A DNA stretch of 64,000 nucleotides, taken from positions 1 through 64,000 of IMG/VR virus record IMGVR_UViG_3300035703_000008. The stretch is one strand, 5' to 3'. Positions 68 to 61,209 of the stretch are shown here, in pieces. Within the stretch, counting starts at the first letter, position 1. Every line of letters starts with the position of its first letter. The notes beneath the pieces were generated by a model. It worked only from the letters and a program-made list of their open reading frames with translations. It was not told the DNA's origin and did not search any database. Position numbers and translations under genes: made by a program.

Positions 68-75
68 TATAAATA
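68..75 (+). promoter_or_regulatory. T4-type late promoter TATAAATA
   Basis: Exact T4 late consensus 4 nt upstream of ORF 80; the core TAAATA recurs before many genes (1041, 1809, 2216, 32025, 60418, 61203, and 59003-59010 on the minus strand). Confidence 0.7.
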
Positions 76-79
76 ACTG

Positions 80-271
80 ATGCGTGCTCAAGAATTCCAA
101 CGACGCGGTCTCAAGACTTATGCGGCCAAGATAAAACTCCGGCAAATCGGGTATGTCAACATCATTGACACCACTGTGCAAGCACGCACTCCTGAGATGG
201 CACGTCGACTGCTGCGCCAGCTCTACGGTGATCGCCATGTGATCGTAGGTCAACCACGAGAGCTCAAATGA
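80..271 (+). CDS. small protein with MRAQEF leader (putative head-internal protein)
   Basis: Follows late promoter; ATGA overlap with next gene; N-terminus shared with three neighbours. Confidence 0.7.
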   Translation: MRAQEFQRRGLKTYAAKIKLRQIGYVNIIDTTVQARTPEMARRLLRQLYGDRHVIVGQPRELK

Positions 272-1107: not shown

Positions 1108-1764
1108 GTGTATTTACAAAACAAATACAGCCGTTGGTATAATAGCATTGTTGATCGAGCAAGATCAAGAACCATCACGGGATATACCGAACGACATCAC
1201 ATCATCCCTCGCAGTTTAGGCGGCGATAACAGTCCATTCAATCTTGTAAATCTCACAGCCAGAGAACACTTCGTTTGCCATCTCTTGCTTACTCGTATGA
1301 CCACAAACGAAGCCCGTAAAAAAATGGTGATGTCTGTGTTCTATCTCACAGGTCGAGGCAAAGCAGATAGACAAAATGTCATCAAACAGTCTCGTCTTTA
1401 TGAAAAACTGCGACAAGAGTTGTCACAGATAGTGAGCCAGAAGAAAAAAGGTTGCCGCCAACCACCTCGCAGCGAACTGGCTAAACAGAGATATTCTCAA
1501 TCAAAAATAGGTCGAAACAATCCCAATGCTCGTGGATACTTTATCACGCCTTGGGGCCAATATGAATCGTCGAGATTAGCAGCTAAACATTGCCCGGTGC
1601 CAATTACCGGCAACTATATCATAAGACTCTGTACCACTAACAATCATATTCCAATAAATCTTTTGAGCGTGTGCAGAAGCAAAGCATATCTTGAAGAGAA
1701 ACACATAGGAAAAACACCATTTGAGATGGGCTTTGAATTTCATCCGTATGAAGTCAGGCCGTAA
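1108..1764 (+). CDS. HNH homing endonuclease
   Basis: ERHHIIPRSLGG..N...NLV.LTAREHFVCH; AT-rich; own TAAATA promoter at 1041. Confidence 0.85.
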   Translation: MYLQNKYSRWYNSIVDRARSRTITGYTERHHIIPRSLGGDNSPFNLVNLTAREHFVCHLLLTRMTTNEARKKMVMSVFYLTGRGKADRQNVIKQSRLYEKLRQELSQIVSQKKKGCRQPPRSELAKQRYSQSKIGRNNPNARGYFITPWGQYESSRLAAKHCPVPITGNYIIRLCTTNNHIPINLLSVCRSKAYLEEKHIGKTPFEMGFEFHPYEVRP

Positions 1765-2264: not shown

Positions 2265-2694
2265 CCTCAAAACACTGTTGGCCACGCAATATGCCTTCGT
2301 GATCAAAGCACAGTTCTTCCACTGGAACGTGGAAGGTCCTGACTTTGCACAACTGCATCGATTCTTTGGCAAGATCTACGAAGAAGTCTACGAAAACAGC
2401 ATAGACCAGACCGCAGAATTCATACGCATACTCGACGACTACACTCCCGGCAGTTTTGAGAGATTCGGCGAGCTCAGCCTCATCACCGGCCAGATCAAGG
2501 TACCGCGTGCTCGTCTCATGATCCAGGAACTCTTGGCCGACACGCAGACCTTGATCGATCAGCTCAACACCACTTTTGACGCAGCCGAATCCGAAGATCA
2601 GCAAGGCATCATGGACTTCCTGGCCAGTCGCATCGACGCCATGGGCAAGCATGGTTGGATGCTGAGGAGTTTCTTGAAAGAGGAGCGAGCATGA
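2251..2694 (+). CDS. dps: Dps/ferritin-like protein
   Basis: HWNVEGPDFAQLHRFF..IYEE and DQTAE ferroxidase motifs; KHGWML C-terminus. Confidence 0.9.
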   Translation: MLVDDLKTLLATQYAFVIKAQFFHWNVEGPDFAQLHRFFGKIYEEVYENSIDQTAEFIRILDDYTPGSFERFGELSLITGQIKVPRARLMIQELLADTQTLIDQLNTTFDAAESEDQQGIMDFLASRIDAMGKHGWMLRSFLKEERA

Positions 2695-3185
2695 GCCACG
2701 ATCTCCGCGACATACTGGGTCGTTTATCGGCCATCGAAGAAGGCCTGGACGCTGATCAGCGCCGGGTGAAACAACTGCCAGCCCTGTTCCGGCCTCGGAA
2801 AACATCACCGGTCCTGGACGGACCCTACGGCAAACGCGATGCCATGGACGGATACCTCGTGGGCGAAGACATGGTCAGTGCCGAGAAAAAGCGTCTCAGT
2901 GACTATCTACATGACGTGGCCCAGGCCATCGAAAAAGACGCAGATCTCGTCAACACCGACTCGCGTGGCCAGGACACCGTGAAGTCAGTGAAGACCATAC
3001 GCACCGACGACGGACATGAGATCAAGATCGTGGGCAACGAAGACGACGGATTCCGTGTGAGCATACGGGACCAGCAAGGTCACACACGATTCAATAACCT
3101 CGACGAGGCCGTGATGGCCTGCGAGATGTACTGCGCCCGCCGCCGCCAGCGCCGATCCAGCCAAGATTACATAGAAGAAGCCTGA
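2691..3185 (+). CDS. hypothetical (putative head-internal) protein
   Basis: GAGGAG RBS; MSHDLRDILGRLSAIEE leader ending in Glu. Confidence 0.65.
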   Translation: MSHDLRDILGRLSAIEEGLDADQRRVKQLPALFRPRKTSPVLDGPYGKRDAMDGYLVGEDMVSAEKKRLSDYLHDVAQAIEKDADLVNTDSRGQDTVKSVKTIRTDDGHEIKIVGNEDDGFRVSIRDQQGHTRFNNLDEAVMACEMYCARRRQRRSSQDYIEEA

Positions 3186-3187
3186 CC

Positions 3188-4789
3188 ATGAACCTACGAG
3201 ATCTATTTGAGAACAACGAACCCACTGCCATGGCCCAGGCTGTGACACGGAGGATACTGAGCACACGCAGTGACCTCTTGAGCCGCTACGGAGTCGAAGC
3301 TGTGAGCCAGGCCATTGATGATGTCACCCAAGGTGACGACTGGGAAGAGATCGGCAGCTCAGACGTGAGTACCTATGTGCGATATGTGGAAGATTACCTG
3401 CGCGATCACCATGGCAGCCGTGAGGAGATGGCGGATCGTCGACCATTCGCCGAACAAGGTGTCTCGGAAATGGATTCGCAAGGTTATCGAGGTCATCGCG
3501 GTGATGAAGATCCAGGCAAAGGTCCAGAAAAAGTAGTCAAGCCAGCCAAGACAAAAGATGTTGCCAAAGACGCAGAAAAAGAATTAACCAAAGCAATGGA
3601 TAAGGCACACAAGAAAGGTGTGGCGGAAGGCACTGAACAAGTTTATAAAGTTCTAGCAGTAGACAAGAGCAATGCATTGTCTGATAAAGTTATGCTAACT
3701 GTAAAAGCAGGTTCTATAGCAGAAGTGTTTGAACGATTGGCCATGAGTGATTGGTATCCATTGTCAATCAACGGTGCGGAAGTCATCGACGGCCGGCGTC
3801 TAAAGCCGGGTGTGGCGGAAGGCTCCGAACAAGTGTATAAAGTCATAGCCGTTGACAAAAACAATGCCCTAGGTAAAAAAGTCAAACTGAATGTCAAGGC
3901 CAGTTCCGTAGAAGAAGTCTTTGAACGATTGGCAATGAGTGATTGGTATCCTTTGGAAATTAATGGTGTTGAAGTCATTGCTGGCAAGCGTCTAAAGCAA
4001 GGTGTGGCGGAAAACCAACGCCGTTTCAACAATGTCAACGACGATGATCTCTATGCTGTAGATCCCCGAACCAAAGAGATCATAGCCCACCTTGGCAATC
4101 CCTACAACAATAGAACGGCTGTATTGATCAAAAAACGCCAGCACGAACAGCAGGGCCACGAGGTCATGTCAGGTATGCGAGCTAAATTCTACAGAGACGT
4201 CGATGAGCAAGGTGTGGCGGAAGGCACTGAAGGCAACTGGTATGTTCGTGTTAAAGGTAAAGTTCTCAAAGATAGCAAATTTAATGCTATCCCTTTTGCA
4301 TCACAAGATGAAGCAAGAAATCATGCATTGACACTTGCTAGAAAGAAAAATATACCATTATCTCAAGTAAAACTTACAAGAAGTTGGATGGATGCACCTG
4401 AGTCAGAGGTTTCGGAAGGTGAATCACAAACTGTAGAAGTTGTGATCAGTGATGGCACACAGCGTCAGCGTCGCAGAGTTCGTGTTAGTCCCAATACACG
4501 CAATGTCGAAGCTGCAGTGTTAAAGTACTATGCCAAAGTAGGACTGCCAGTTGTATCTATCAATGGCCGACCTGTGAGGGCTGCCATGGCCGAGGGCGAT
4601 GGCAGCACATGTCCTGAGTGCGGTGGTCCCATATTCAAGAGCCGGTTCATGGCCGAAGAGCAGGACGCCTGCTATCGCAAAGTCAAAAGCAGATACAAGG
4701 TGTGGCCATCGGCCTATGCGTCAGGCGCTCTGGTGCAGTGCCGCAAGAAAGGTGCTGCCAACTGGGGCACAGGAGGTAAGAAAAAATGA
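3188..4789 (+). CDS. modular polyprotein with repeated GVAE junctions (putative protease-processed head protein)
   Basis: GVSE, four GVAE, EVSE and two MAE junctions separate ~50-70 aa modules. Confidence 0.8.
   Translation: MNLRDLFENNEPTAMAQAVTRRILSTRSDLLSRYGVEAVSQAIDDVTQGDDWEEIGSSDVSTYVRYVEDYLRDHHGSREEMADRRPFAEQGVSEMDSQGYRGHRGDEDPGKGPEKVVKPAKTKDVAKDAEKELTKAMDKAHKKGVAEGTEQVYKVLAVDKSNALSDKVMLTVKAGSIAEVFERLAMSDWYPLSINGAEVIDGRRLKPGVAEGSEQVYKVIAVDKNNALGKKVKLNVKASSVEEVFERLAMSDWYPLEINGVEVIAGKRLKQGVAENQRRFNNVNDDDLYAVDPRTKEIIAHLGNPYNNRTAVLIKKRQHEQQGHEVMSGMRAKFYRDVDEQGVAEGTEGNWYVRVKGKVLKDSKFNAIPFASQDEARNHALTLARKKNIPLSQVKLTRSWMDAPESEVSEGESQTVEVVISDGTQRQRRRVRVSPNTRNVEAAVLKYYAKVGLPVVSINGRPVRAAMAEGDGSTCPECGGPIFKSRFMAEEQDACYRKVKSRYKVWPSAYASGALVQCRKKGAANWGTGGKKK
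3617..4224 (+). repeat. dispersed in-frame repeat GGTGTGGCGGAA(GG)
   Basis: Exact copies at 3617, 3809, 4001, 4211 (spacing 192, 192, 210); degenerate copies at 3458 and 4406. Confidence 0.9.
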
Positions 4790-5181
4790 GAGACATCATT
4801 GATCTACTGGAGGCCATCGAACAGGGTTGCCCTCCAGCCACGCAGAACATCGATCTCAACTTGAAGAATCGCCAGCGGGCCATTGACGAATATCATTATG
4901 GTCCGCTCAATCCTGCCCGGCCCAGCCTGGAGTATTGGCAAGAACTGGCAGATCAATGGAATACATCTGTAGAAGAAGCACAGAGTGCCAGATGTAGAAA
5001 CTGTGCCGCTTTCGACATCACCCAAAAGACCTTGGATTGTATCGACCGAGGCATAGGTGGCGACGACGATTGGGATATCATCAAAGCCGGCAAACTGGGC
5101 TATTGTAGATTCCTCAAGTTCAAATGCAATGCTTTGCGTTCGTGCTCGGCGTGGGTGGAAGGCGGACCTGTTCGAGACTGA
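4786..5181 (+). CDS. Cys-rich hypothetical protein
   Basis: MRDIIDLLEAIE leader; CRNC...GYC....FKC....SC zinc-binding-like pattern. Confidence 0.7.
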   Translation: MRDIIDLLEAIEQGCPPATQNIDLNLKNRQRAIDEYHYGPLNPARPSLEYWQELADQWNTSVEEAQSARCRNCAAFDITQKTLDCIDRGIGGDDDWDIIKAGKLGYCRFLKFKCNALRSCSAWVEGGPVRD

Positions 5182-5182
5182 T

Positions 5183-5557
5183 ATGAGAGCCCAAGAATTC
5201 GTCACCGAAAAGTGGAGCACCAAGTATAAACGCTCTATCAATTGCTCTGACCCTCGGGGATTCAGCCAGCGTGCCCATTGTCAGGGTCGTAAGAAAAACA
5301 ATGAAGATCAAGACCTGGCGGAAGATCTACGCAAGTGGTTCCGAGAAAAGTGGGTTCGTTTTGGCCCTGATGGAAAGATTCGCGGGGATTGTGCTCGCGG
5401 ATCCGACGCTGAGGGCAAGCCCAAGTGCCTGCCACAATCAAAGGCACATGCCCTGGGCAAGAAAGGTCGTGCGAGTGCGGCAGCCCGTAAGCGCAGACAA
5501 GATCCCAATGCCGACCGCCGTGGCGCTGCACGGAATGTTCCCACGAAAAAATCATGA
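5183..5557 (+). CDS. basic two-module protein with MRAQEFVTE leader
   Basis: ATG at 5183; modules separated by LAE. Confidence 0.7.
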   Translation: MRAQEFVTEKWSTKYKRSINCSDPRGFSQRAHCQGRKKNNEDQDLAEDLRKWFREKWVRFGPDGKIRGDCARGSDAEGKPKCLPQSKAHALGKKGRASAAARKRRQDPNADRRGAARNVPTKKS

Positions 5558-5779
5558 CATTCGTTGATCCCAATAACTACCCTGTGTGGCCCGAAGACGA
5601 CGGCACAGATCAAAAAAGAAATCCCTATAGTCCAGTTTAACGATGAAAAAACCCACTCCACAAAAACCCGCATTCCAACCCCAAGTGGTCCAGCACGGCA
5701 GCCCCATACGACGCATGACACCACCGCCCCGGATGAGCCAGCGAGCAGTATTCGTGAGTGTGCCAATCCGCCTCAACGG

Positions 5780-8844: not shown

Positions 8845-10122
8845 ATGAACTATAAAGTAGCAGATATCTCACTGGCCGCTTGGGGCCATCGCGAAATCGC
8901 CATTGCCGAGCACGAAATGCCGGGTCTCATGGCCATCCAGAGCAAGTACCAAGGTCAGCTGCCTTTAAAGGGCGCTCGAATCGTGGGCAGCCTGCACATG
9001 ACCATCCAGACAGCGGTACTGATCAAAGTTCTAGTGGCGCTCGGTGCCGAAGTGCGCTGGAGTTCCTGCAACATCTTCTCTACGCAGGACCATGCTGCTG
9101 CAGCCATTGCTGACCTTGGCATCCCTGTGTTTGCTTGGAAAGGCGAAACCGAAGAAGAATACTGGTGGTGCATCGATCAGACCATCGAGGGCTGGCAGCC
9201 CAACATGATCCTCGACGACGGTCACGATCTCACCGATCGTATCATCACCCGGTATCCTGATCTCGTGCCTGGCATCCTGGGAGTCAGCGAAGAAACCACC
9301 ACAGGTATCCTGCGTCTCAGAGAAAAGGCCGCTGCTGGTCAACTACCATTTCCAGCCTTCAACGTCAACGACTCAGTGACCAAGTCAAAGTTTGACAACC
9401 TCTACGGCTGCCGTGAAAGTCTCGTGGATGGCATCAAGCGTGCCACCGATGTCATGATCGCCGGCAAAGTGGCCGTGGTCTGCGGATTTGGTGATGTGGG
9501 CAAAGGATCCGCTGCTGCCTTGCGCACGCTCAGTGCCCAGGTCTGGGTCACTGAAAGCGATCCCATCTGCGCCCTGCAGGCCGCCATGGAAGGCTATCGT
9601 GTTGTGACCATGGACTGGGCCGCTGACAAGGCCGACATCTTTGTCACAGCCACCGGCAACATCAATGTGATCACACGTGCCCACATGGATGTGATGAAGC
9701 ACAACGCCATCGTATGCAACATCGGCCACTTCGACAACGAAATTGATGTGGCTGCCCTCGATGATCTTGCCTGGGAAGAGATCAAGCCCCAAGTGGATCA
9801 CATCTGCTGGCCTGATGGCAAAAGAATCATTCTCTTGGCCCGAGGACGCTTGGTAAACCTGGGCTGCGCTACAGGACATCCTAGTTTCGTGATGTCAAAT
9901 TCGTTTACCAATCAAGTGTTGGCACAGATCGAGCTGTATCAGAATCATAGAGACTACGATTCAGGAGCAGTGTATGTGTTGCCTAAACGACTCGACGAGG
10001 AAGTAGCTCGTTTGCATCTTGCACAGATTGGTGCCCAGCTCACCGAGTTGACTCCGGCACAGGCCGAATACATCAGTGTGCCTGTGGAAGGCCCTTACAA
10101 GCCCGACGCATATAGATACTAA
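8845..10122 (+). CDS. ahcY: S-adenosylhomocysteine hydrolase
   Basis: [56 protein letters not shown]. Confidence 0.97.
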
Positions 10123-10222: not shown

Positions 10223-10897
10223 ATGAAACTAGAAATATTAGATCTGTTTGAACCCGGCGAGTGGGATTGGTTAAAACAGGACATGCTGGATCGCATCGAC
10301 GCAGAAGGAGTTGATAGACTCTTTGACGAGAGTTTCGCTGATTCAGTGTGGGGGATCAAAGGCCTGTGTCGAGTGGATCGTCGCGTGGTATTGGCCTACA
10401 ATGATCCGGCTTTCATGATGATAAAACAAATACTGGACCGACATTTTCACGGGTCACAGTGGTTTTATATCGCCTATCAGAGACAGTACATTCCCCACGG
10501 GCTCCATGTCGACATCGGCGATCGACACTATGCCAGCAGTGAAGGTTATAGCCTGGTAATCCCCATGCAACAATCTCCGGAATTCAAATTGTTTCTCTGG
10601 GACAAAAAATTTGACAGCATGGATCAGTTGCAAGAATTTCGCAACGAAATAAAAACACATCCCGAAAAATATATTCCGGTCAACAATCTCAGCCAGGATC
10701 ATCAACTTGCTCATTGCAATCTTGATCTTCCCATCACTGACTATATGGAGCTAGCAGGTATCTATGAGTATAAAATCGGTACCATAGCTAAATTTCCCAA
10801 AAATCATGTTCATGCCAGTCACGACTGGCTGGCGTCCAAAAACCACACGCACAAAGATCTTATCATAATACACAGCATGCCACCTTCCCATGACTAA
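10223..10897 (+). CDS. putative 2OG-Fe(II) oxygenase-like protein
   Basis: YIAYQRQYIPHGLHVD plus HVH; paralogue of 5780..6466. Confidence 0.55.
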   Translation: MKLEILDLFEPGEWDWLKQDMLDRIDAEGVDRLFDESFADSVWGIKGLCRVDRRVVLAYNDPAFMMIKQILDRHFHGSQWFYIAYQRQYIPHGLHVDIGDRHYASSEGYSLVIPMQQSPEFKLFLWDKKFDSMDQLQEFRNEIKTHPEKYIPVNNLSQDHQLAHCNLDLPITDYMELAGIYEYKIGTIAKFPKNHVHASHDWLASKNHTHKDLIIIHSMPPSHD

Positions 10898-12257
10898 TAT
10901 ACACATACCCGTAGAAACTATCCAGCAATGGAAAGCCAGAGTGCTAGATGTCAAAAGCCCCACATTTTGCGGAGCCAAATGGTATCATGCTTCTATGTGG
11001 CTCAACGCTGGAGTGACCACCAGCTGCCACCACAACCCTCCGCATGCCATCGATCGGGAAGCCATTAAAACCAATCCCAGTGCCTTGCACAATACCCCGA
11101 TCAAAAAGCAAGAAAGAGGTATGCTGCAGCGTGGAGAAAAACCCAAGAATTGCCAATTTTGCTGGGTCATGGAAGACCTTGATTCCAACAATGTCAGTGA
11201 TCGGGTATGGCAAAGCACTGTGAGTTCCGAGGAAAGCCTACAATTTGCCTACGAGCAAAGCAACGAAATCGATGTAGCTCCGCATTACCTAGAAGTCAGT
11301 TTCGACCCTACATGCCAGCTGGCCTGCTCATATTGTTGCCCTAGCATATCCAGCAGCTGGGCCAGAGATGTCAAGCAAAACGGTCCCTACCAAAATCTGC
11401 CAACAGATCATCGCAATCACTATATCTATGACGGCAGCGACGCCAGACTGTTTGGCATACAAGAAGTGAATCCCTATGCCGAAGCCTGGTTCCGCTGGTG
11501 GGACACCGAACTACACAAGAGCCTACGGCAGTTAAGGATCACCGGCGGCGAGCCCATGATGAGTCCGCACACTTGGCGTCTTTTAGATTGGCTGGCCAAG
11601 AATCCCAATGAAAGCGAGACACGTATCGAGATGACCACCAATCTCACCTACAACGATGAGATACTGGATCGTTTCCTGGACCATGCCAGTAAAATCAAAC
11701 AACCTATCTGGATCTATACTTCAGGCGAAAGTGTGGGTGCTCGTGCCGAGTACGTGAGAGATGGTCATTCCTGGGAACAATGGCTGAAAAATGTCGAACA
11801 TGTACGCACCAGTGGAGTGATCGAAAATGTCAGTATCTGTGGCACCATGAGCGCGATCAGCAATGATGGGTTCGTGGAGTTCTTGCATTTTCTCTTGGAT
11901 CAGAAACGCCAGTACGGTGCCAACTGGATGTTGATGAGTGTGAACTTGGTTCGATTCCCCACGTTCCAAAACATAGTGGTACTGCCCATGGAACTCAGGA
12001 TGGAGTATGCCCGGGAAATCGAAGACTTCATGGCCATACCCGACGTAGAAACTTTGTTTGTGCCATTTGAAAAAGATCACATCAATCGTTACATACGATA
12101 TCTACGCGGTGTGATCAAACCCCACGACGACGCCGACACCAACATTGATGCGTTGCGTCGCGACTTCCGCAGTTTCTTTGATCAGTATGACCAACGCAGG
12201 AACAAGGACTTTTGTGCCACGTTCCCGCGCTTGGCCGATTGGTATCGCAGTCTCTAG
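10890..12257 (+). CDS. radical SAM protein with N-terminal Twitch/SPASM-like Cys cluster
   Basis: CQLACSYC, TGGEP; N-terminal C...CHH...CQFC. Confidence 0.9.
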   Translation: MTNIHIPVETIQQWKARVLDVKSPTFCGAKWYHASMWLNAGVTTSCHHNPPHAIDREAIKTNPSALHNTPIKKQERGMLQRGEKPKNCQFCWVMEDLDSNNVSDRVWQSTVSSEESLQFAYEQSNEIDVAPHYLEVSFDPTCQLACSYCCPSISSSWARDVKQNGPYQNLPTDHRNHYIYDGSDARLFGIQEVNPYAEAWFRWWDTELHKSLRQLRITGGEPMMSPHTWRLLDWLAKNPNESETRIEMTTNLTYNDEILDRFLDHASKIKQPIWIYTSGESVGARAEYVRDGHSWEQWLKNVEHVRTSGVIENVSICGTMSAISNDGFVEFLHFLLDQKRQYGANWMLMSVNLVRFPTFQNIVVLPMELRMEYAREIEDFMAIPDVETLFVPFEKDHINRYIRYLRGVIKPHDDADTNIDALRRDFRSFFDQYDQRRNKDFCATFPRLADWYRSL

Positions 12258-12958
12258 TTTGTGACTGGCTTGCTGGTGGCCACATAAGGCGCCGTGGGCG
12301 CCTGATACCTCTCCAATGGCACAGCATTTACTGTGAGACCCAGGAGACTGCTATAGCGTATCTCATCGGTGTCGTTGACACCACCGTGCCAGGAATTGTT
12401 GGTGTTGGCATGCCACCATCCGTCACCGTAGGCAGTAGTGATGCGTGTGGGATTATTTCTTTCTAGATCATCCCAGAAAAAACTGCTGAGTCGAGGATCA
12501 TCGTGCTCGCTCCAGTAAACAAGCCCGGTAGCTACCAAAAGGCGATAATCAGTGTGTATATCGTTGACGAACCCAGGTAGGTCTTTGGTGAGTTCACCGT
12601 GTATGGCGCAGTGTTTGAACATGCTGTCTGGCTGCCATCCCCACCAAGACGGGAATTCAGGCAAGCGATCGTACATGGCATCGATGAGCTTGCGCTTGAG
12701 TTCATCCGAGCAGAAATATCTCTGCAGTTCCCAGAGTTTGCGATTTTCCTGGCGTGGCCACAGTACCTTGAACCGCTTGCCAGGCCAGTGATTGATGTTG
12801 ACCTCGCTGGTGGCTCCAAAAGGTTGCCAGTTCTCGCACTCGAACTCTTCTAGTAGCTCATTGCGAGTATAAGGGATATCGATTTTGAGACGAAACAAAT
12901 GACGCTTTTCTTCTACTGCATCCATGCGGATATTAAAACCCGGGAATGATTTTTCCAT
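12254..12958 (-). CDS. 2OG-Fe(II) oxygenase-like protein
   Basis: IHTD...SWHG......R facial triad pattern; start uncertain. Confidence 0.6.
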   Translation of the reverse strand: MEKSFPGFNIRMDAVEEKRHLFRLKIDIPYTRNELLEEFECENWQPFGATSEVNINHWPGKRFKVLWPRQENRKLWELQRYFCSDELKRKLIDAMYDRLPEFPSWWGWQPDSMFKHCAIHGELTKDLPGFVNDIHTDYRLLVATGLVYWSEHDDPRLSSFFWDDLERNNPTRITTAYGDGWWHANTNNSWHGGVNDTDEIRYSSLLGLTVNAVPLERYQAPTAPYVATSKPVTN

Positions 12959-12971
12959 ATATAAAGTTCCA

Positions 12972-14183
12972 ATGAATAAAAATTCTAAACTGTACTGCGT
13001 ATGGGCCGATTCGGGCCTGGCCTTGCACAACAGCGGGCGCACTCTCTTGTGTTGTCACAGTCGTAAATATCTACAGGACGAGAGCGGCAACGATATTTAC
13101 CTACACACCCACTCCCTGGAGCAAAGTCTCGACAGTCCCACACGGCAGGAAATACAGGCGGCCCTGGAACAAGGCGAGCAGCATTGGAACTGCCAGGCCT
13201 GCTGGGACGAGGAATCTGCCGGCAGAGACAGTCGCAGGGTAGTATCCAACCGCATGAATCAACACATAGATACCAGTGGTCGTAATCCCAAGCTCTTGGA
13301 TCTCAAGCTGGGCAACACCTGCAACCTGGCCTGCCGTCATTGCTGGCCCGAAGTTTCCAGCAAGTGGGTCCGAGATTTCTACGAGATCGCTGTGCGGAAG
13401 ACCGGGCAGAGCTATCCTGAATACCTTGCACGCTGGGACTCGATACAAAAGAGCTATGATCGAGACAACGAACCCTTGTGGACACAGTTGCGAGAATACG
13501 TGGATGGCGCCGAGTACATTGATGTGTATGGTGCTGAACCCATGCTGCTGCATCGGCTCTGGGAGATACTGGACTACAGTGTACAATCGGGACACAGTCA
13601 GCATCAAAGCATACATGTCAACACCAACGGAACCATCTGGAATCCCCGATACATCGAGACACTGGGTAAATTCCGTCATGCGCAGATCGATCTCAGCATC
13701 GACGGTGTAGATCAGCACTTCGACTACATACGTTACGGAGAGCCTTGGTCAGTGATGGCCGAGAATCTCGATCGTTACAAGGCCTGGAGTGATCCTCTGC
13801 CCAACGTCAATATCTGTGTGTGTATCACTGTGTTCGCCCTCAATGTCTGGTATCTGCCTGAGCTTTATCGATTTTTCCGAGAACGAAAAATCAGCGTGTT
13901 CTTCAACTTCTTGCACATGCCCCAGTACCTCAATCTCAAGACCTTCCCTGATCCCATCAAACAGGCCATCATAGAAAAACTCGACAGCGTGACCATCGAC
14001 TCGAGGTGGGAGCAAGAGATCCCAGCCGTAAAAAACTTCTTATTGGCCCGAGATCATGACCCCCAGCAACAATGGAAAGATTTCTGCCGTAACACCGATC
14101 ACCTTGACCAACTAAGATCTCAGTCGTTCAGTGACACATTCCCGGAGTTTTGGTCAGTGGTCAAGCCCCATTGGCAAGCCTGA
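12972..14183 (+). CDS. radical SAM protein (Twitch/SPASM-like)
   Basis: CNLACRHC, YGAEP, NTNGT, LSIDG; N-terminal C..CC..CQAC. Confidence 0.9.
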   Translation: MNKNSKLYCVWADSGLALHNSGRTLLCCHSRKYLQDESGNDIYLHTHSLEQSLDSPTRQEIQAALEQGEQHWNCQACWDEESAGRDSRRVVSNRMNQHIDTSGRNPKLLDLKLGNTCNLACRHCWPEVSSKWVRDFYEIAVRKTGQSYPEYLARWDSIQKSYDRDNEPLWTQLREYVDGAEYIDVYGAEPMLLHRLWEILDYSVQSGHSQHQSIHVNTNGTIWNPRYIETLGKFRHAQIDLSIDGVDQHFDYIRYGEPWSVMAENLDRYKAWSDPLPNVNICVCITVFALNVWYLPELYRFFRERKISVFFNFLHMPQYLNLKTFPDPIKQAIIEKLDSVTIDSRWEQEIPAVKNFLLARDHDPQQQWKDFCRNTDHLDQLRSQSFSDTFPEFWSVVKPHWQA

Positions 14184-15303: not shown

Positions 15304-16019
15304 TGATTATTTTGAGTTTTCCGGGCGGAGCTGGTGGTAACTGGCTTAAACGACTCATCAGAGACGACTTCGAAGAGTTTAAAACACCCGGAATCAACTT
15401 TCATCGTAAAAGAAACACCGATTCCACTGTAAAACTGATTCACGAATTGGATCGTACCAAATTCACTCATCTATACAGCGGAACCTTTTACTTTAATTTT
15501 TATGTCAACGTGTTGTACAAACATTTTGTACATGAACGAAAAATACAAAATCTGGATTACGAATCAGCATTGTTGACTTGTGTAGACACTGCAAAGTATA
15601 TTTGCAGCTTTGATCTGATCAAAGACTCTATCCACTTTGATTTCGACGATCTGGTGCACCGCCCTGATGAGTTTATTCGCAAAGTCAATGCAGTCCAACT
15701 GGAATATCAATTGCCTATCACCCACAGCGACAGATATTTCAGTTTTAGAAAAGACTTCTTTGATACCTGCGTCAACATCTCGGATTTGCACGAAAATTTT
15801 GACAACATGATATGGACATCCTTTGTGATCGGGCAACTCATGAATTTAAATATTGTACCCAACGATTTTGAGATCCACCGTGTTGACAATCAGTCCTTGT
15901 GTAAAAAATTTGCCATTGACAACTACAGCAATTGTATGTTAAAAAACAGCTATGAGTTTCAATCATCGGTGTTGTTAGATGATTTCTTGAGCGGAAACGT
16001 ATTTACTGGAAGCCTGTGA
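15303..16019 (+). CDS. sulfotransferase/P-loop-like hypothetical protein
   Basis: N-terminal FPGGAGGNWL; AT-rich. Confidence 0.45.
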   Translation: MIILSFPGGAGGNWLKRLIRDDFEEFKTPGINFHRKRNTDSTVKLIHELDRTKFTHLYSGTFYFNFYVNVLYKHFVHERKIQNLDYESALLTCVDTAKYICSFDLIKDSIHFDFDDLVHRPDEFIRKVNAVQLEYQLPITHSDRYFSFRKDFFDTCVNISDLHENFDNMIWTSFVIGQLMNLNIVPNDFEIHRVDNQSLCKKFAIDNYSNCMLKNSYEFQSSVLLDDFLSGNVFTGSL

Positions 16020-18673
16020 GTTACATCGACGCACTTTTTGATCGCGACCGCGATCGCATACACATCGTGGGCCGGAGAAACGGCGAGCGCTACTACGAAG
16101 ATCATCCGGCCACTTATGTGTTCTACTACGACGACCCCAGGGGCAAGTTCCGCAGCATCTACGGAAACCCAGTGTCGAGATTTTCGAGCAGGAACAACAA
16201 AGAGTTTCGCAAAGAGCTAAGGATTCAAAGCGGCAAGAACACCTACGAAGCCGACATCAATCCTGTGTTCCGATGCTTGGAGGAAAACTACAAAGGACAA
16301 GATGCGCCGCGCTTGCACACCGCGTTCTTTGACATCGAAGTAGACTTTGACCCCGAGCGCGGATTCAGCCGTCCCGAAGATCCGTTCAATCCCATCACTG
16401 CCATCTCGGTATACCTGGACTGGCTAGACCAGCTAGTGACCCTGGTGCGTCCGCCGCGACATATGAGCGCAGAGACCGCACAAGAGATCGCAGCCGAGTT
16501 CCCCAACACGTTTGTATTCCACGACGAAGCCGAACTGCTAGACACTTTCCTTAATCTCATCGAGGATGCCGATGTCTTGAGTGGCTGGAACTCCGAGGGC
16601 TATGATATTCCTTACACCGTGATGCGTACCACACGGGTGATGAGCAAAGACGACACGCGTCGTTTCTGCCTTTGGAATCAACTGCCCAAGCAGCGTACCT
16701 TTGAAAGATTTGGCGCCGAGAACATCACATTCGATCTCATCGGTCGTGTGCATCTCGACTACATGCAACTGTATCGTAAATACACCTATGAAGAACGACA
16801 CAGCTACAGCCTGGATGCCATCGGAGAATACGAAGAACTGGGATCAAAAACAGCCTTCGAAGGAACCTTGGATCAGCTCTACAACCAAAACTGGAAAACC
16901 TTCATCGAGTACAACCGCCAAGACGTGCAGCTCTTGGCAGCCATTGACAAAAAACTGCGTTTCCTGGATCTAGCCAACACACTGGCTCATGAAAACACAG
17001 TGCTCCTACCCACTACCATGGGTGCGGTAGCAGTTACCGAGCAAGCCATCATCAACGAAGCCCACGAACGTGGAATGGTAGTACCTGTCAGAAAGGAACG
17101 CCTCACTGATGAAGACACACAAGCCGCAGGTGCCTATGTTGCTTATCCCAAAAAAGGTATGCACGAATGGATCGGGTCAATCGACATCAACAGTCTATAC
17201 CCGTCAACCATCCGCGCTCTTAACATGGGGCCGGAAACCATCGTAGGCCAGTTGAGGCCCACGATGACTGACCGCTACATCGCAGAAAAGATGCGTGGCG
17301 GTGCCAGTTTCGCGGCAGCCTGGGAGGGCCTGTTCGGCACACTCGAATACATGGCCGTGATGGAACAGCAGCGTGGCACAGAGATCACCATCGACTGGCA
17401 AGATGGCGAGGAAACTGTGCATTCGGCCGCGGAAGTATGGCGCATGATCTTTGATTCAAACCAGCCCTGGATGATATCGGCCAATGGTACTATCTTCACT
17501 TATGAGACCGAAGCCGTGATCCCGGGCTTGCTCAAGCGTTGGTATGCCGAGCGTAAGGACATGCAGAAAAAGCTAAAGGAATCCACTACCAAGGAAGATG
17601 AAGAATACTGGGACAAGAGACAGCTGGTCAAGAAGATTAACCTTAACAGCCTTTATGGCGCTATCCTTAATCCTGGCTGTAGGTTTTTTGACAAAAGGAT
17701 CGGTCAATCCACCACGCTTACCGGTCGTGCCATCGCGCAACACATGGATGCCTATGTAAACGAATGTGTGACTGGCAGCTATGATCACGTTGGTGAGGCC
17801 ATCATCTACGGTGACACAGACTCGTGTTACTTTTCTGCGTGGCCGGTGCTGCAGCGAGAAGTGGCCGAAGGGCGCATGGCATGGTCCAAAGAGACCTGCA
17901 TCCAGCTCTATGACAGCATCGCTGACCAAGTCAATGACTCATTCCCGGGATTTATGGAACGAGCTTTCCACTGTCCCAGGGAGATGGGCTCGGTGATCCG
18001 AGGCGGTCGCGAGATTGTGGGATCCAAAGGCCTGTTCATCACCAAGAAACGCTATGCCGTGATGATCATCGACAAGGAAGGCAAGAGGATTGATGTGCAA
18101 GGTCGGCCTGGACGGGTCAAGGCCATGGGCCTGGATCTCAAGAGATCTGACACGCCGCGTGTGATCCAGGACTTCCTCAGCGACGTTCTCAACGATGTGC
18201 TCACTGGTGTCACAAGAGAGCAAGTGATCGAGAAGATACGTGACTTCAAATACCAATTCTCTGAGCGTCCGGGCTGGGAGAAAGGTTCGCCCAAGCGTGC
18301 CAACAACATCACCATGTATGGCAAGAAAGAAGAGCGAGAAGGCAAAGCCAACATGCCAGGCCATGTGCGGGCGAGTTTGAATTGGAACACTCTACGACGC
18401 ATGAATTCAGACAACTACTCGATGCAGATCGTGGACGGCATGAAAGTGATCGTGTGCAAGCTCAAATCCAATCCCTTGGGCTGGACATCGATCGCGTACC
18501 CCACTGACGAACTGCATCTGCCACAGTGGTTCCGTGATCTGCCATTTGACGACGCCGAGATGGAGGCCACCGTCATAGACGGCAAGATTGACAACCTATT
18601 AGGTGTTTTGGACTGGGATCTTGGGTCGGCTACCAACACCGAAAACACTTTCCAGACCTTGTTTGAGTTCTAG
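16016..18673 (+). CDS. family B DNA polymerase (T4 gp43-like)
   Basis: FFDIEVD exonuclease I motif, DINSLYPS, KINLNSLYG, YGDTDS, KKRY. Confidence 0.97.
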   Translation: MSYIDALFDRDRDRIHIVGRRNGERYYEDHPATYVFYYDDPRGKFRSIYGNPVSRFSSRNNKEFRKELRIQSGKNTYEADINPVFRCLEENYKGQDAPRLHTAFFDIEVDFDPERGFSRPEDPFNPITAISVYLDWLDQLVTLVRPPRHMSAETAQEIAAEFPNTFVFHDEAELLDTFLNLIEDADVLSGWNSEGYDIPYTVMRTTRVMSKDDTRRFCLWNQLPKQRTFERFGAENITFDLIGRVHLDYMQLYRKYTYEERHSYSLDAIGEYEELGSKTAFEGTLDQLYNQNWKTFIEYNRQDVQLLAAIDKKLRFLDLANTLAHENTVLLPTTMGAVAVTEQAIINEAHERGMVVPVRKERLTDEDTQAAGAYVAYPKKGMHEWIGSIDINSLYPSTIRALNMGPETIVGQLRPTMTDRYIAEKMRGGASFAAAWEGLFGTLEYMAVMEQQRGTEITIDWQDGEETVHSAAEVWRMIFDSNQPWMISANGTIFTYETEAVIPGLLKRWYAERKDMQKKLKESTTKEDEEYWDKRQLVKKINLNSLYGAILNPGCRFFDKRIGQSTTLTGRAIAQHMDAYVNECVTGSYDHVGEAIIYGDTDSCYFSAWPVLQREVAEGRMAWSKETCIQLYDSIADQVNDSFPGFMERAFHCPREMGSVIRGGREIVGSKGLFITKKRYAVMIIDKEGKRIDVQGRPGRVKAMGLDLKRSDTPRVIQDFLSDVLNDVLTGVTREQVIEKIRDFKYQFSERPGWEKGSPKRANNITMYGKKEEREGKANMPGHVRASLNWNTLRRMNSDNYSMQIVDGMKVIVCKLKSNPLGWTSIAYPTDELHLPQWFRDLPFDDAEMEATVIDGKIDNLLGVLDWDLGSATNTENTFQTLFEF

Positions 18674-23738: not shown

Positions 23739-24247
23739 ATCGCCCAGGGCACGAGCAGATAGCATTTTTCTGGGGCAACGAAGTCGAGCACACTCCCATG
23801 CTGGGACGACCCACCTTGTTTGTGGTAGGCTTGCGCAGCGTGTCAGACATCGAGCGAGAATTGGAAAAACGACCCGATGTCGAGCACATCTTTTTTGGAG
23901 CCAACGACAGTTATCTCCCCAGTGACTGGAAAGATCACCAGGCCTGGGAAAGCATGATCGCTACATTCCTGGATCGTGGCCATTGGTGCAGTCTGGATAT
24001 TCCATTCCGGTATGTGGAAGAGTTTCATGAAGGTGGTCTATGTGAACACCATCGTTTCATTCCCATCATCAAAGTTCCGATCCCTTACTCGGGACTCTGG
24101 AACTACAATACCTGTGTCAAGATCGACGATCGAGACTTCGCTGCCACCAATCCCGGTGTGTGGGTACATCAACTCCATGCGCTCATGAGTCGTGATCGAT
24201 TCACCGATTGGAGCCAATATAGCAAGGATGCCCCAGTCAATGACTGA
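23735..24247 (+). CDS. hypothetical protein in the deazaguanine neighbourhood
   Basis: GNEVEHTP..G.PTLFV and DF.ATNPGVW; core-like codon usage. Confidence 0.65.
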   Translation: MNRPGHEQIAFFWGNEVEHTPMLGRPTLFVVGLRSVSDIERELEKRPDVEHIFFGANDSYLPSDWKDHQAWESMIATFLDRGHWCSLDIPFRYVEEFHEGGLCEHHRFIPIIKVPIPYSGLWNYNTCVKIDDRDFAATNPGVWVHQLHALMSRDRFTDWSQYSKDAPVND

Positions 24248-58997: not shown

Positions 58998-59077
58998 CTA
59001 GATATTTATAGCATGCCGGGTTGTTGTTTGTTACATCAATAAGACACCAGATACAGTAAATCATCAGTAAATAGAGA

Positions 59078-61200: not shown

Positions 61201-61209
61201 TATAAATAC

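What the first reader, a model, noticed from the sequence alone, without database searches (positions are those of the whole stretch)
3455..4660. Cassette-built polyprotein: an invariant 12-nt junction separates in-frame protein modules (candidate module-shuffling system)
Seen: GGTGTGGCGGAA occurs identically at 3617, 3809, 4001 and 4211, with degenerate copies at 3458 and 4406. All spacings are multiples of 3 (159, 192, 192, 210, 195). The codons GGT-GTG-GCG-GAA never vary, although the two homologous modules (3629-3808 and 3821-4000) differ at many synonymous sites. Other modules are unrelated to each other, and several look more AT-rich than the gene ends. Known: T4-type prohead proteases cut after Glu. 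Inference: the junction works both as a protease site releasing small effectors and as a DNA recombination or insertion site for adding and swapping modules. That would be an integron-like array inside one ORF that diversifies injected cargo. I know of no description of such a system.
Basis: partly seen in the sequence, partly recalled or inferred. Interest (0 to 1): 0.85.

Follow-up and report, generated by a model that had tools for sequence, protein, structure and literature searches.

The report
Codon-invariant linker joins swappable phage protein modules
One gene of an uncultured giant phage is a string of small protein domains joined by a short linker whose DNA letters hardly vary across hundreds of related phages, and domains are gained, lost and swapped exactly at that linker, which points to a built-in way of shuffling protein parts that has apparently not been described.

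Summary
ORF 3188-4789 (533 aa) carries GGTGTGGCGGAA four times in frame as Gly-Val-Ala-Glu, plus two diverged copies.

- **Breakpoints:** Syntenic orthologues that are 89-95% identical in shared parts carry different module sets. Every breakpoint lies on this 12-mer or its variant GGTGTCTCGGAA.
- **Spread:** The same linker separates unrelated modules of about 50-75 aa in at least 120 viral contigs of up to 374 kb.
- **Codons:** In loci found through protein only, GVAE is spelled with these exact codons in 49 of 68 cases, against about 1% expected from codon usage. Flanking bases extend the motif to AAGGTGTGGCGGAAG.
- **Composition:** Modules M1, A, A', D and E have foreign, AT-rich third codon positions.
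- **Structure:** AlphaFold gives folded modules with disordered linkers.
- **Peptide:** Variant linkers keep [V/M/L/I]-x-Glu, which is the T4 prohead-protease motif. N-termini resemble T4 capsid-targeting leaders.

Best reading: the linker is a portable in-frame recombination site, the within-gene counterpart of T4 PeSL cassettes, and probably also a maturation cleavage site. Cleavage, injection and any dedicated recombinase are untested. I rate it a new variant of a known kind, of high interest.

The parts
3188..4789 (+). Gene for a 533-aa beads-on-a-string protein: leader, conserved N-domain, variable module array and conserved C-terminal part
   Evidence: ORF list. Syntenic orthologues lie between the ferritin/Dps-like gene and the AdoHcyase gene. 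The ESM Atlas model of the whole protein has pTM 0.21, so it has no global fold.
3188..3211 (+). N-terminal leader MNLRDLFE, ending in Leu-Phe-Glu. It resembles a T4 capsid-targeting sequence with its cleavage site.
   Evidence: Of 113 related proteins, 70 have [LIVFM]-x-E ending at residues 6-14, most often residue 8, with P3 = L (49) or I (16). Internal control windows give 23.6 +/- 4.1. The T4 motif L/I-X-E and the 10-residue CTS are described in PMC9026906.
3188..3457 (+). Conserved N-terminal domain with native composition (GC3 0.59)
   Evidence: It is 89-95% identical in DNA to L001, L002, L004 and L005. It also occurs internally in other multi-module proteins such as P0009, P0045 and P0060.
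3458..3469 (+). Junction J0, GGTGTCTCGGAA (GVSE variant)
   Evidence: The same 12-mer sits at this boundary in L001, L004 and L005. A contig of another sample joins 3464 to 4008.
3470..3616 (+). Module M1 (MDSQGYRG...), lysine-rich and low in complexity, GC3 0.31
   Evidence: Among the syntenic orthologues it is present only in L001, at 95% nt identity. It recurs in 22 other proteins at varied positions.
3617..3628 (+). Junction J1, GGTGTGGCGGAA (GVAE)
   Evidence: Loose ends of contigs from three other samples pile up at 3630-3636. pLDDT is below 50 in the model.
3629..3808 (+). Module A, an autonomous 60-aa beta-beta-alpha-beta-beta domain, GC3 0.37
   Evidence: AlphaFold2 pLDDT 90.8, with the fold spanning residues 4-58. 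It has 52 homologues at varied positions in other proteins. It is absent from the four syntenic orthologues.
3809..3820 (+). Junction J2, GGTGTGGCGGAA
   Evidence: The V-A-E residues have pLDDT below 50 between two folded domains.
3821..4000 (+). Module A', a second version of the module A family, GC3 0.38
   Evidence: It is 76% aa identical to A but 90% identical to P0062 and P0067.
4001..4012 (+). Junction J3, GGTGTGGCGGAA
   Evidence: It is the right-hand breakpoint of the 3464->4008 joint and of the module differences with L001, L004 and L005.
4013..4210 (+). Module M4 (NQRRFNNV...), shared with all orthologues, native composition (GC3 0.56)
   Evidence: It is 92-93% identical in DNA to L001, L004 and L005 and 79% to L002.
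4211..4222 (+). Junction J4, GGTGTGGCGGAA
   Evidence: Loose ends lie at 4206, and a joint runs 4217->4413.
4223..4405 (+). Module D (GTEGNWYV...), the most AT-rich module (GC3 0.20)
   Evidence: It is absent from the four syntenic orthologues. It has 18 homologues at 62-80% identity in other proteins. Composition.
4406..4417 (+). Decayed junction J5, GAGGTTTCGGAA (EVSE)
   Evidence: Read directly from the sequence. It is in frame. The joint 4217->4413 in a contig of another sample has 7 letters that fit both sides.
4418..4600 (+). Module E (TVEVVISDG...), part of the conserved C-terminal region
   Evidence: Homologues at 39-65% identity occur in P0002-P0008 and P0015.
4601..4789 (+). C-terminal CPECGG plus a DUF5872-like domain
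   Evidence: phrog_727 E = 3e-20. Pfam DUF5872 scores only 14.4 bits against a cut-off of 27.5. It is 73-85% aa identical over about 40 residues to cyanomyovirus proteins annotated as structural or virion protein.

Best explanation
The gene encodes a 'beads-on-a-string' protein of an uncultured phage of the T4 superfamily. Its contig is at least 209 kb, and relatives reach 374 kb. Small autonomous domains of about 50-75 aa are joined by one standard linker, (Q/K/E)-G-V-A-E-(G). The linker is written with nearly invariant DNA, AAGGTGTGGCGGAAG.

**Shown.**
- The linker is the exact breakpoint of module gain, loss and replacement between close syntenic orthologues.
- The same linker, with the same codons and always in the same frame, separates unrelated modules in hundreds of phage contigs.
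- Its synonymous sites are conserved far beyond what the peptide requires.
- Several modules in this copy have foreign, AT-rich composition.

**Inferred mechanism.**
- The identical short linkers act as portable in-frame homology for the phage's own very active recombination machinery, as PeSL elements do between genes in T4-type phages.
- Any module flanked by two linkers can then be deleted, duplicated or copied into any other linker of a co-infecting genome without breaking the reading frame.
- Modules whose linkers stay intact remain exchangeable, and this keeps the DNA motif uniform.

**Second inferred layer.** The peptide fits the hydrophobic-x-Glu site of T4-type prohead proteases, and the N-terminus looks like a T4 capsid-targeting leader. 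The array is therefore probably carried into the prohead by one leader and cut into single domains there.

**Confidence by layer.** About 0.9 that junctions are the exchange points, about 0.55 that DNA identity is kept because it serves recombination through general homology, and about 0.4 that the linker is cleaved by the prohead protease. The figure given is for the composite.
For: **Breakpoints at the junction.**
- L001, L004 and L005 are 89-95% identical in DNA in shared parts but differ by whole modules. L002 is 90% identical in the N-domain and 79% in the NQRRF module. Every breakpoint lies on GGTGTGGCGGAA or GGTGTCTCGGAA.
- Contigs of other samples join 3464->4008 and 4217->4413 and diverge at 3630-3636 and 4206.
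- The junction variant is linked to neither flank: compare AEQ-GVSE-NQRRF in L004, and HKK-GVAE in the window against HKK-GVSE in L001.

**Spread.**
- In 596 Gb of cellular genomes it gives only 56 stretches, almost all single hits and many in high-GC actinomycetes.
- Of 267 copies of the 12-mer, 266 are in frame in long ORFs.

**DNA-level constraint.**
- The exact 12-mer encodes GVAE at 105 of 171 sites not used for ascertainment. In loci found through degenerate peptide patterns only, the figure is 49 of 68, or 42 of 57 without two duplicate loci.
- About 1% is expected from codon usage, where GCG is 10% of Ala codons and GTG 26% of Val codons.
- The -1 residue varies among Q, K and E but its codon is always xAA (CAA 82, CAG 1; background 74:26). 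The +1 residue varies among G, A, D, E and V, all with Gxx codons.
- Homologous modules at 50-80% aa identity share codons at 47-60% of conserved G/V/A/E residues, but at 79-88% of junction codons.

**Import.** GC3 is 0.20-0.38 in M1, A, A', D and E, against 0.555 for the genome. The pool of related loci has median GC 0.41.

**Linker and protease layer.**
- AlphaFold2 gives two folded domains, with pLDDT below 50 only at the three GVAE stretches.
- In 146 variant junctions, Glu is kept in 141, Val changes only to M, L, I or A, and the middle residue is free.
- Leaders are enriched for L/I-x-E at residue 8.
- gp21-like protease and gp23-like capsid genes are present in the junction-bearing loci L015 and L028, and gp20 plus gp21 in L120.
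- Homologues of the C-terminal domain are annotated as virion proteins.

**Precedents.** PeSL-mediated shuffling and mini-circles (PMC2839356), and exchanges at conserved motifs in T-even adhesin genes (PMC3157838).
Against: - No recombination event, excised circle or within-population length variant was observed. Only assembled contigs of other samples were available.
- Twelve to fifteen identical bases is well below the patch size usually quoted for efficient T4 recombination ('<50 bp' in PMC2839356). Homology alone may therefore be too weak, and an unidentified enzyme may be involved.
- There are no virion proteomics. P3 is Val, not the canonical Leu/Ile. A minimal protease site does not explain why Gly at P4 and Ala at P2 are so uniform.
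- The gene's neighbours here are metabolic or replication genes, not head genes. Across all loci, structural genes are not enriched near junction-bearing genes.
- No module of this gene has an assignable function.
- Part of the contig survey was ascertained with the exact motif. The protein-ascertained set is smaller, at 17 loci.
Confidence: 0.6

Rival explanations
1. An enzyme-driven, site-specific cassette system, an 'intragenic integron'. A dedicated recombinase or nuclease recognises the roughly 15-bp motif, excises modules as circles and inserts them at other copies of the motif. The DNA motif stays invariant because it is a recognition site.
For: - The strength and length of the DNA conservation (15 nt, including flanking bases that change the amino acid) looks more like a recognition site than a mere homology patch.
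- Breakpoints are precise.
- The homology is short for efficient general recombination (PMC2839356).
- Homing-endonuclease-like ORFs lie nearby in some loci: a weak HNH at window 1108-1764 and a GIY-YIG-like ORF beside the junction-bearing gene in L015 and L028.
Against: - No integrase, recombinase or conserved candidate enzyme accompanies the gene in the window or in four syntenic loci.
- The HNH ORF is not conserved at the orthologous loci.
- The motif has no dyad symmetry or attC-like hairpin.
- Decayed junctions still appear as breakpoints (4406).
Confidence: 0.15
2. The motif is purely a protein-level linker or cleavage site. Modules are shuffled by rare random illegitimate recombination, and only in-frame products at linkers survive. 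The uniform codons reflect something other than recombination, such as a translational requirement or common descent of linker plus module.
For: - Non-synonymous variants are rarer per site than synonymous ones, and the substitution pattern (hydrophobic-x-Glu) shows real peptide-level selection.
- The linkers are disordered spacers between folded domains.
Against: - The codons used include the rarest Ala codon and a non-preferred Val codon of these AT-rich genomes. They are still exact in 61-74% of sites against about 1% expected.
- The neighbouring residues vary in chemistry but keep their bases (xAA before, G after).
- Unrelated modules share the same codons, so common descent of module plus linker cannot explain it.
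- Another conserved peptide motif in the same window, the MRAxEF gene starts, does use varied codons.
Confidence: 0.12
3. An RNA-level or translation-level signal. The motif contains the Shine-Dalgarno-like AGGUG and could pause ribosomes between domains to aid co-translational folding, or serve as an RNA processing site.
For: AAGGUG lies at the 5' end of the motif and always falls at domain boundaries. The match of AGGUG to the anti-Shine-Dalgarno sequence is from my own knowledge.
Against: - Conservation is equally strong over GCGGAAG, which has no Shine-Dalgarno character.
- No start codon follows at a suitable distance.
- There is no Rfam match.
- This reading does not explain why indel breakpoints fall on the motif.
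Confidence: 0.05
4. A local artefact or trivial repeat: a recent tandem duplication inside this one gene, or chimeric metagenome assembly across a short repeat.
For: TRF reports a 192-bp period with 2.1 copies. The data are metagenomic assemblies.
Against: - A and A' are only 76% identical, and each is closer to copies in other phages.
- The junction also borders unrelated modules.
- The same architecture is found in independent assemblies from JGI, ENA and Logan. L002 and L003 carry the same 466-aa protein and the same junctions although they come from two sources.
- An 18-nt repeat is shorter than usual assembly k-mers (my own knowledge).
- The window's contig is recovered intact at even depth in its source run.
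Confidence: 0.02

Closest known systems
PeSL (promoter-early stem-loop) cassettes of T4-type phages (Arbiol et al. 2010, PMC2839356; Comeau et al. 2014, PMC4122927)
   Same: Short conserved repeated DNA elements in phages of the T4 superfamily mark the breakpoints of insertion, deletion and replacement between close relatives. They are proposed to act as homology for the phage's own recombination system. The authors themselves compare them with integrons and with Botstein-Campbell 'linker' sequences.
   Different: PeSLs are intergenic regulatory elements (a promoter plus a terminator) that move whole ORFs. The element here is 12-15 nt of coding sequence in a fixed frame. It moves protein domains inside ORFs and has no promoter or terminator features. 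Mini-circles were shown for PeSLs but could not be looked for here.
Recombination at conserved motifs inside T-even tail-fibre adhesin genes: glycine-rich motifs of gp38 and the conserved motifs of the adhesin genes studied by Tetart et al. 1996/1998, as cited in PMC3157838
   Same: This is intragenic. [quoted passage not shown]
   Different: Those motifs are part of one folded domain's structural core in one orthologous gene, and the order of segments is fixed. Here the motif is a disordered spacer between autonomous domains. The number and order of modules vary, and the same motif serves many unrelated genes and module families.
T4 internal proteins (IPI-III, Alt) with a capsid-targeting sequence and gp21 cleavage at L/I-X-E (PMC9026906, PMC3012670)
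   Same: Both involve a short N-terminal leader ending in hydrophobic-x-Glu, a highly diverse cargo behind a conserved targeting or cleavage signal, and hyperplastic loci. The leader statistics and the substitution pattern of the junction match that motif.
   Different: T4 internal proteins are single-domain genes, each with its own leader. Here many domains hang behind one leader with internal Val-Ala-Glu sites. Packaging and cleavage are untested, and P3 is Val rather than Leu or Ile.
Polyvalent proteins of phages and conjugative elements (Iyer et al. 2017, PMC5512222)
   Same: Both are multidomain phage proteins with 2-15 domains in variable combinations. They are predicted to be packaged, delivered with the DNA and sometimes processed proteolytically.
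   Different: The hallmark domains of that class (MPTase peptidase, ART, ParB-like and others) were not found in this protein. That work describes no standard linker conserved at the nucleotide level.
Demarcation motifs of polymorphic toxins (VENN in CdiA, PxxxxDPxGL in Rhs)
   Same: A short conserved peptide, and its coding DNA, marks the border where variable modules are exchanged. In Rhs it is also a cleavage site. This comparison rests on my own knowledge and was not tested here.
   Different: There is one border per protein, between a constant shaft and a C-terminal toxin, in bacterial genes. It is not a repeated linker between many internal cassettes, and no toxin or immunity pair is present here.
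Integron gene cassettes (attC x attI, IntI)
   Same: Both are arrays of exchangeable cassettes bounded by a repeated site, and the cassettes come from a pool shared between genomes.
   Different: No IntI-type recombinase was seen, and the site has no attC hairpin. The cassettes here are protein domains translated in one frame, not separate genes.

Membership tests
Integron | Adjacent tyrosine recombinase (IntI) gene | tested here: not met
   No recombinase family appears among the precomputed Pfam hits of neighbours in four syntenic loci, nor among the 10 window ORFs flanking the gene. The rest of the genome was not scanned.
Integron | attC sites: imperfect inverted repeats of about 60-140 bp that fold as hairpins | tested here: not met
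   The conserved element is 12-15 nt with no dyad symmetry (read directly from the sequence). Conservation falls to background immediately outside it.
PeSL cassettes of T4-type phages | Sigma-70-like promoter plus stem-loop terminator, located between genes | tested here: not met
   The motif is coding and in frame in 266 of 267 cases. No promoter or terminator pattern lies at the junctions.
PeSL cassettes of T4-type phages | Insertions, deletions and replacements between close relatives have their breakpoints at the repeated element | tested here: met
PeSL cassettes of T4-type phages | Extrachromosomal mini-circles formed by exchange between neighbouring elements | not testable with these tools
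   Only assembled contigs (Logan) were available for the runs that hold this DNA.
Substrates of T4-type prohead protease (gp21) | Cleavage motif hydrophobic(L/I)-X-Glu | tested here: inconclusive
   The junction is V-A-E. In variants P3 is V, M, L or I, P2 is free and P1 is Glu in 141 of 146. The N-terminus has L-F-E at residues 6-8. This fits the pattern, but Val is not the canonical P3 residue and the motif is short.
Substrates of T4-type prohead protease (gp21) | A gp21-family protease encoded by the same phage | tested here: inconclusive
   gp21 homologues are present in the junction-bearing loci L015, L028 and L120 (E 1e-8 to 1e-18). None was found in this 64-kb window, and the rest of the 209-kb contig was not available.
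Substrates of T4-type prohead protease (gp21) | The protein is in the prohead or virion and is found cleaved | not testable with these tools
   This needs mass spectrometry of particles. The only indirect evidence is that C-terminal-domain homologues are annotated as structural or virion protein in S-B68 and S-SCSM1.
Polyvalent proteins (Iyer et al. 2017) | Several conflict-related enzymatic or anti-defence domains in one polypeptide | tested here: not met
   No such domain was found in the window protein. Among relatives, there is only a source-given GNAT name for P0002 and a cytidylyltransferase domain in P0103.
DUF5872 (PF19197) | Score above the Pfam gathering threshold | tested here: not met
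   14.4 bits against a cut-off of 27.5. Homology of the C-terminal 40-60 residues to cyanophage proteins is nevertheless clear (phrog_727 E = 3e-20; tblastn 73-85% identity). Relatives P0053 and P0103 pass the threshold.

The most novel reading that the evidence does not exclude
A dedicated in-frame domain-cassette system in T4-superfamily phages. A phage enzyme not yet identified recognises AAGGTGTGGCGGAAG and moves about 60-aa domain cassettes between genes and genomes as excised circles. The encoded Val-Ala-Glu is cut by the prohead protease, so each infection delivers a rapidly re-assortable set of small injected proteins. One 15-nt element would then serve both as recombination site and as maturation site.
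Probability: 0.15. Interest if true: 0.92.

Novelty: new variant of a known kind. Interest (0 to 1): 0.78.

Why it matters
**What it would add.** Modular evolution of phages is usually described at the level of genes. Here the exchangeable unit is a protein domain, and the 'linker sequence' that Botstein and Campbell postulated lies inside the reading frame. It is standardised in sequence and frame across many genes and many genomes.

**What becomes testable.** The idea that sequence conservation can be maintained by exchangeability itself becomes directly testable. One could recode the linker synonymously and measure exchange.

**Practical value.**
- The linker gives a simple marker, an 18-mer, for finding a large pool of small autonomous phage domains of unknown function. 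Many of these may be capsid-delivered.
- It points to a natural design rule for in-frame cassette swapping, and possibly for multi-cargo loading of T4-type capsids behind a single targeting leader.

Tried and rejected
**Searches that found nothing useful.**
- Pfam and PHROGs on the whole protein matched only the C-terminal domain.
- The PDB sequence search gave no hit.
- A Foldseek search of the module A model against the PDB gave nothing below E = 0.37. The resemblances to RNAP epsilon/YkzG and AcrIF9 are not significant.
- The ESM Atlas neighbours all score below 0.9, so they are leads only.
- There was no Rfam match at 2500-5600.
- A literature search for 'GVAEG' found nothing relevant, and 'DUF5872' found one unrelated mention.
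- No cultured phage matches any part except the C-terminus.

**Technical failures and limits.**
- A stacked alignment of module homologues meant for a full-length AlphaFold run misaligned (A2) and was dropped. A two-module segment was modelled instead (A3).
- Read-level heterogeneity and circles could not be examined, because the runs are held only as contigs.

**Ideas tested and dropped.**
- Modules exist as stand-alone small genes with their own leader. This was rejected for module A, where only 2 short proteins were found and both still carry GVAE. It is supported only for the DUF5872-related pair, ORF 5183-5557 against the S-B68 structural protein.
- Junction-bearing genes cluster with head genes. 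This holds in L015 and L028 but there is no overall enrichment.
- A host could be inferred from cellular genomes. The hits are at about chance level or lie on probably mis-binned short MAG contigs.
- The antisense ORF 3643-4038 is treated as spurious. All conservation is in the sense frame.
Full report
**1. The observation**

ORF 3188-4789 (+, 533 aa) contains GGTGTGGCGGAA at 3617, 3809, 4001 and 4211. These are the only exact copies in the 64-kb window. All are in frame as Gly-Val-Ala-Glu.
- A variant, GGTGTCTCGGAA (GVSE), lies at 3458. A decayed copy, GAGGTTTCGGAA (EVSE), lies at 4406. All spacings are multiples of three.
- The two homologous modules A (3629-3808) and A' (3821-4000) are 75.6% identical in DNA. 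They use different codons at 19 of 43 conserved degenerate residues, while the junction codons never differ.
- TRF reports the 192-bp period. The other modules are unrelated to each other.
- GC falls from about 0.55 to 0.33-0.47 across the array. GC3 is 0.20-0.38 in modules M1, A, A', D and E, against 0.56-0.63 in the N-domain, NQRRF module and C-terminus. The genome mean is 0.555 and the 5th percentile is 0.40.

**2. What genome this is**

The window is the first 64 kb of IMG/VR contig IMGVR_UViG_3300035703_000008, which is 208,932 bp long (locus L128).
- Its family-B DNA polymerase (16016-18673) is nearest to those of cultured jumbo myoviruses, at 42-50% identity. These include Sinorhizobium phage Phosso, Agrobacterium phage Atu_ph07, and Yersinia, Erwinia and Serratia jumbo phages.
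- No cultured phage matches the window at the DNA level.
- Only the last 40-60 residues of the protein match cultured phages. Those matches are cyanomyovirus proteins, two of them annotated as structural or virion protein (S-B68, T4-GC0119; S-SCSM1).

**3. Orthologues differ by whole modules, cut exactly at the junction**

A protein search returned 457 relatives. Typical hits have high identity over only 10-30% of the query, in proteins of 300-900 aa on contigs up to 363 kb.
- Four syntenic loci lie between a ferritin/Dps-like gene upstream and an AdoHcyase gene downstream. Three of them are 89-95% identical to the window in the shared N-domain and 92-93% in the NQRRF module. L002 is 90% and 79%.
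- Their module content differs:
  - L004: N-domain | NQRRF.
  - L005: N-domain | GFID | NQRRF.
  - L001: N-domain | M1 | GFID | a module that JGI names GNAT | NQRRF.
  - Window: N-domain | M1 | A | A' | NQRRF | D.
- Every boundary is GGTGTGGCGGAA or GGTGTCTCGGAA.
- The junction variant follows neither the upstream nor the downstream module consistently, so exchanges resolve within the junction.
- Contigs of other samples laid on the window show the same picture. There are joints at 3464->4008 and 4217->4413, with 6-7 letters shared by both sides. Loose ends pile up at 3630-3636 and 4206.
- Every module of this gene, including the 'N-terminal' domain, recurs at varied positions in many other multi-module proteins.
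- A and A' are each closer to copies elsewhere (86% and 90%) than to each other (76%). They are separate acquisitions or an old duplication.

**4. The junction is conserved as DNA**

Many carry several copies.
- In 596 Gb of bacterial and archaeal genomes it gives 56 stretches. Nearly all are single hits, many of them in high-GC actinomycetes, which is about chance level.
- Across all loci, 266 of 267 copies of the 12-mer lie in frame in long ORFs with a median open length of 650 codons.
- Codon usage in those ORFs predicts the exact 12-mer in about 1% of GVAE sites (GGT 0.45 x GTG 0.26 x GCG 0.10 x GAA 0.81).
- Observed values are far higher. It is exact at 105 of 171 sites (61%) not used to find the loci. 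It is exact at 49 of 68 sites (72%) in 17 loci found only through degenerate peptide patterns of module A. Without two duplicate loci that figure is 42 of 57. In those loci module A itself has diverged to 54-86% amino-acid identity.
- The residue before the junction varies among Gln, Lys and Glu, but its codon is xAA (CAA 82, CAG 1; background 74:26). The residue after varies among Gly, Ala, Asp, Glu and Val, whose codons all start with G. The conserved unit is thus about 15 nt, AAGGTGTGGCGGAAG.
- In homologous module pairs at 50-80% identity, codons agree at 47-60% of conserved G/V/A/E residues inside modules. They agree at 79-88% of junction codons.
- For contrast, the MRAxEF motif that begins four ORFs of this window is written with varied codons.

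**5. The junction is also constrained as a peptide**

Among in-frame sites one or two bases away from the consensus (n = 146), the substitution pattern is specific:
- Glu is kept in 141. It changes to Lys 3 times and Gln twice, and never to Asp, Ala, Gly or Val, although these are one step away.
- Val changes only to Met, Leu, Ile or Ala.
- Ala is replaced freely (Glu, Ser, Thr, Val, Lys, Gly).
- Gly changes to Asp, Ala or Ser.

This gives [small]-[V/M/L/I]-x-Glu, the pattern of the T4 gp21 site L/I-X-E (PMC9026906).
- AlphaFold2 models module A as an autonomous beta-beta-alpha-beta-beta domain with pLDDT 90.8.
- A model of the A-junction-A' segment has two such domains, with pLDDT below 50 only at the three GVAE stretches.
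- Of 113 related proteins, 70 begin with a leader ending in [LIVFM]-x-E at residues 6-14, most often residue 8, with P3 Leu or Ile. Internal control windows give 23.6 +/- 4.1. The window's own leader is MNLRDLFE. This recalls the 10-residue capsid-targeting sequence of the T4 internal proteins.
- gp21-like protease and gp23-like capsid genes are present in the junction-bearing loci L015 and L028, and gp20 plus gp21 in L120. In L015 and L028 the junction-bearing gene lies two genes after the capsid gene.
- Overall there is no enrichment of junction-bearing genes near structural genes.

**6. Interpretation**

Shown:
- A standard in-frame linker, conserved at the DNA level, marks the breakpoints of domain gain, loss and replacement.
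- It is shared by unrelated modules, many genes and many genomes.
- Several modules in this copy look imported from AT-richer relatives. The pool of related loci has median GC 0.41.

Inferred:
- The linker acts as portable homology for recombination. This makes it the within-gene counterpart of PeSL elements, which mediate cassette shuffling and form mini-circles in T4-type phages and which their discoverers already compared with integrons (PMC2839356). It is also a counterpart of exchanges at conserved motifs in T-even adhesin genes (PMC3157838).
- A uniform reading frame is a necessary property of such a system, whatever the peptide does.
- The peptide is probably also a prohead-protease site. 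One leader would then load a string of domains that are separated inside the head, as a multi-cargo version of the T4 internal proteins. This is conceptually related to polyvalent proteins (PMC5512222).

Not shown:
- Any actual recombination event or circle, any cleavage, or any packaging or injection.
- Any function of a module, or any dedicated enzyme.

Twelve to fifteen bases is short for general recombination. A site-specific enzyme therefore remains a live alternative, at about 0.15.

**7. Novelty**

I found no description of this linker or of a nucleotide-invariant intragenic cassette junction in phages. The text search covers open-access papers only. The principle, conserved linker sequences that mediate modular exchange in T4-type phages, is known. 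Its form here is new: inside reading frames, at domain resolution, standardised across genes and genomes, and probably doubling as a cleavage site. I therefore rate it a new variant of a known kind, with high interest.

Noticed in passing
window 80-271, 268-1047, 2103-2264, 5183-5557: Four ORFs begin with M-R-A-x-E-F (MRAQEF, MRASEF, (V)RAREF, MRAQEF). Two continue to a hydrophobic-x-Glu (MRAQEFVTE, MRAREFINE), so they resemble the T4 capsid-targeting sequence MKTYQEFIAE. Unlike the GVAE junction, the motif is written with varied codons (CGT/AGA/CGA for Arg, GCT/GCC for Ala).
   Followed up: partly
window 5183-5557: This 124-aa ORF is homologous (37% over 84 aa, pairwise E = 5e-5) to the N-terminal half of the Synechococcus phage S-B68 'structural protein' (T4-GC0119). 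The C-terminal half of that protein is the DUF5872-like domain that ends the gene under study. The same two domains are therefore fused in one phage and lie in separate genes here.
   Followed up: partly
window 1108-1764: This 218-aa ORF has weak HNH endonuclease matches (Pfam E = 0.003-0.009, below the thresholds). It lies 1.4 kb upstream of the modular gene and is not present at the orthologous position in the four syntenic loci.
   Followed up: partly
window 68-75: TATAAATA, which by my own knowledge is the T4 late-promoter consensus, ends 4 nt before the ATG of ORF 80-271. There are only 3 copies in the window (0.6 expected). The others are at 59003-59010 (-) and 61201-61208 (+).
   Followed up: no
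window 10890-12257, 12924-14183, 24192-25424; 8845-10122; 2251-2694; 56396-57961: There are three radical-SAM-like ORFs, an S-adenosylhomocysteine hydrolase, a ferritin/Dps-like protein and a ribonucleotide reductase large subunit. This is an unusual metabolic load for a phage region, and several ORFs of 400-500 aa have no PHROG match at all.
   Followed up: no
L015:3213-3983 and L028:7842-8588: A GIY-YIG/seg-like homing-endonuclease ORF (MKPYTYLIKHRPTGQVYYGV...) sits between the gp23-like capsid gene and the junction-bearing gene in two related contigs. I identified it by eye from the N-terminal motif and did not test it.
   Followed up: no
L005:4001-5339: The orthologue P0006 (387 aa) ends early (...GALAEADSDHE) and lacks the C-terminal DUF5872-like domain. 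A separate 60-aa ORF follows. This may be a frameshifted or split copy of the gene.
   Followed up: no
P0009, P0017, P0022 (proteins): In proteins of about 800 aa, the 'N-terminal domain' and module M1 of the window gene are appended to the C-terminus of a large domain that matches phrog_13484 (virion structural protein, E = 5e-10). P0017 and P0022 carry an extra module inserted between them. All three end in a conserved tail, DPLxRLKxLALAKTR.
   Followed up: partly
L191 (MAG contig CAILDT010000116.1, 'uncultured Bacteroidetes'): An 8.9-kb contig binned into a bacterial MAG carries three exact copies of the 18-mer. It is probably a mis-binned phage contig of this group. Several other short MAG contigs may be the same.
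   Followed up: no
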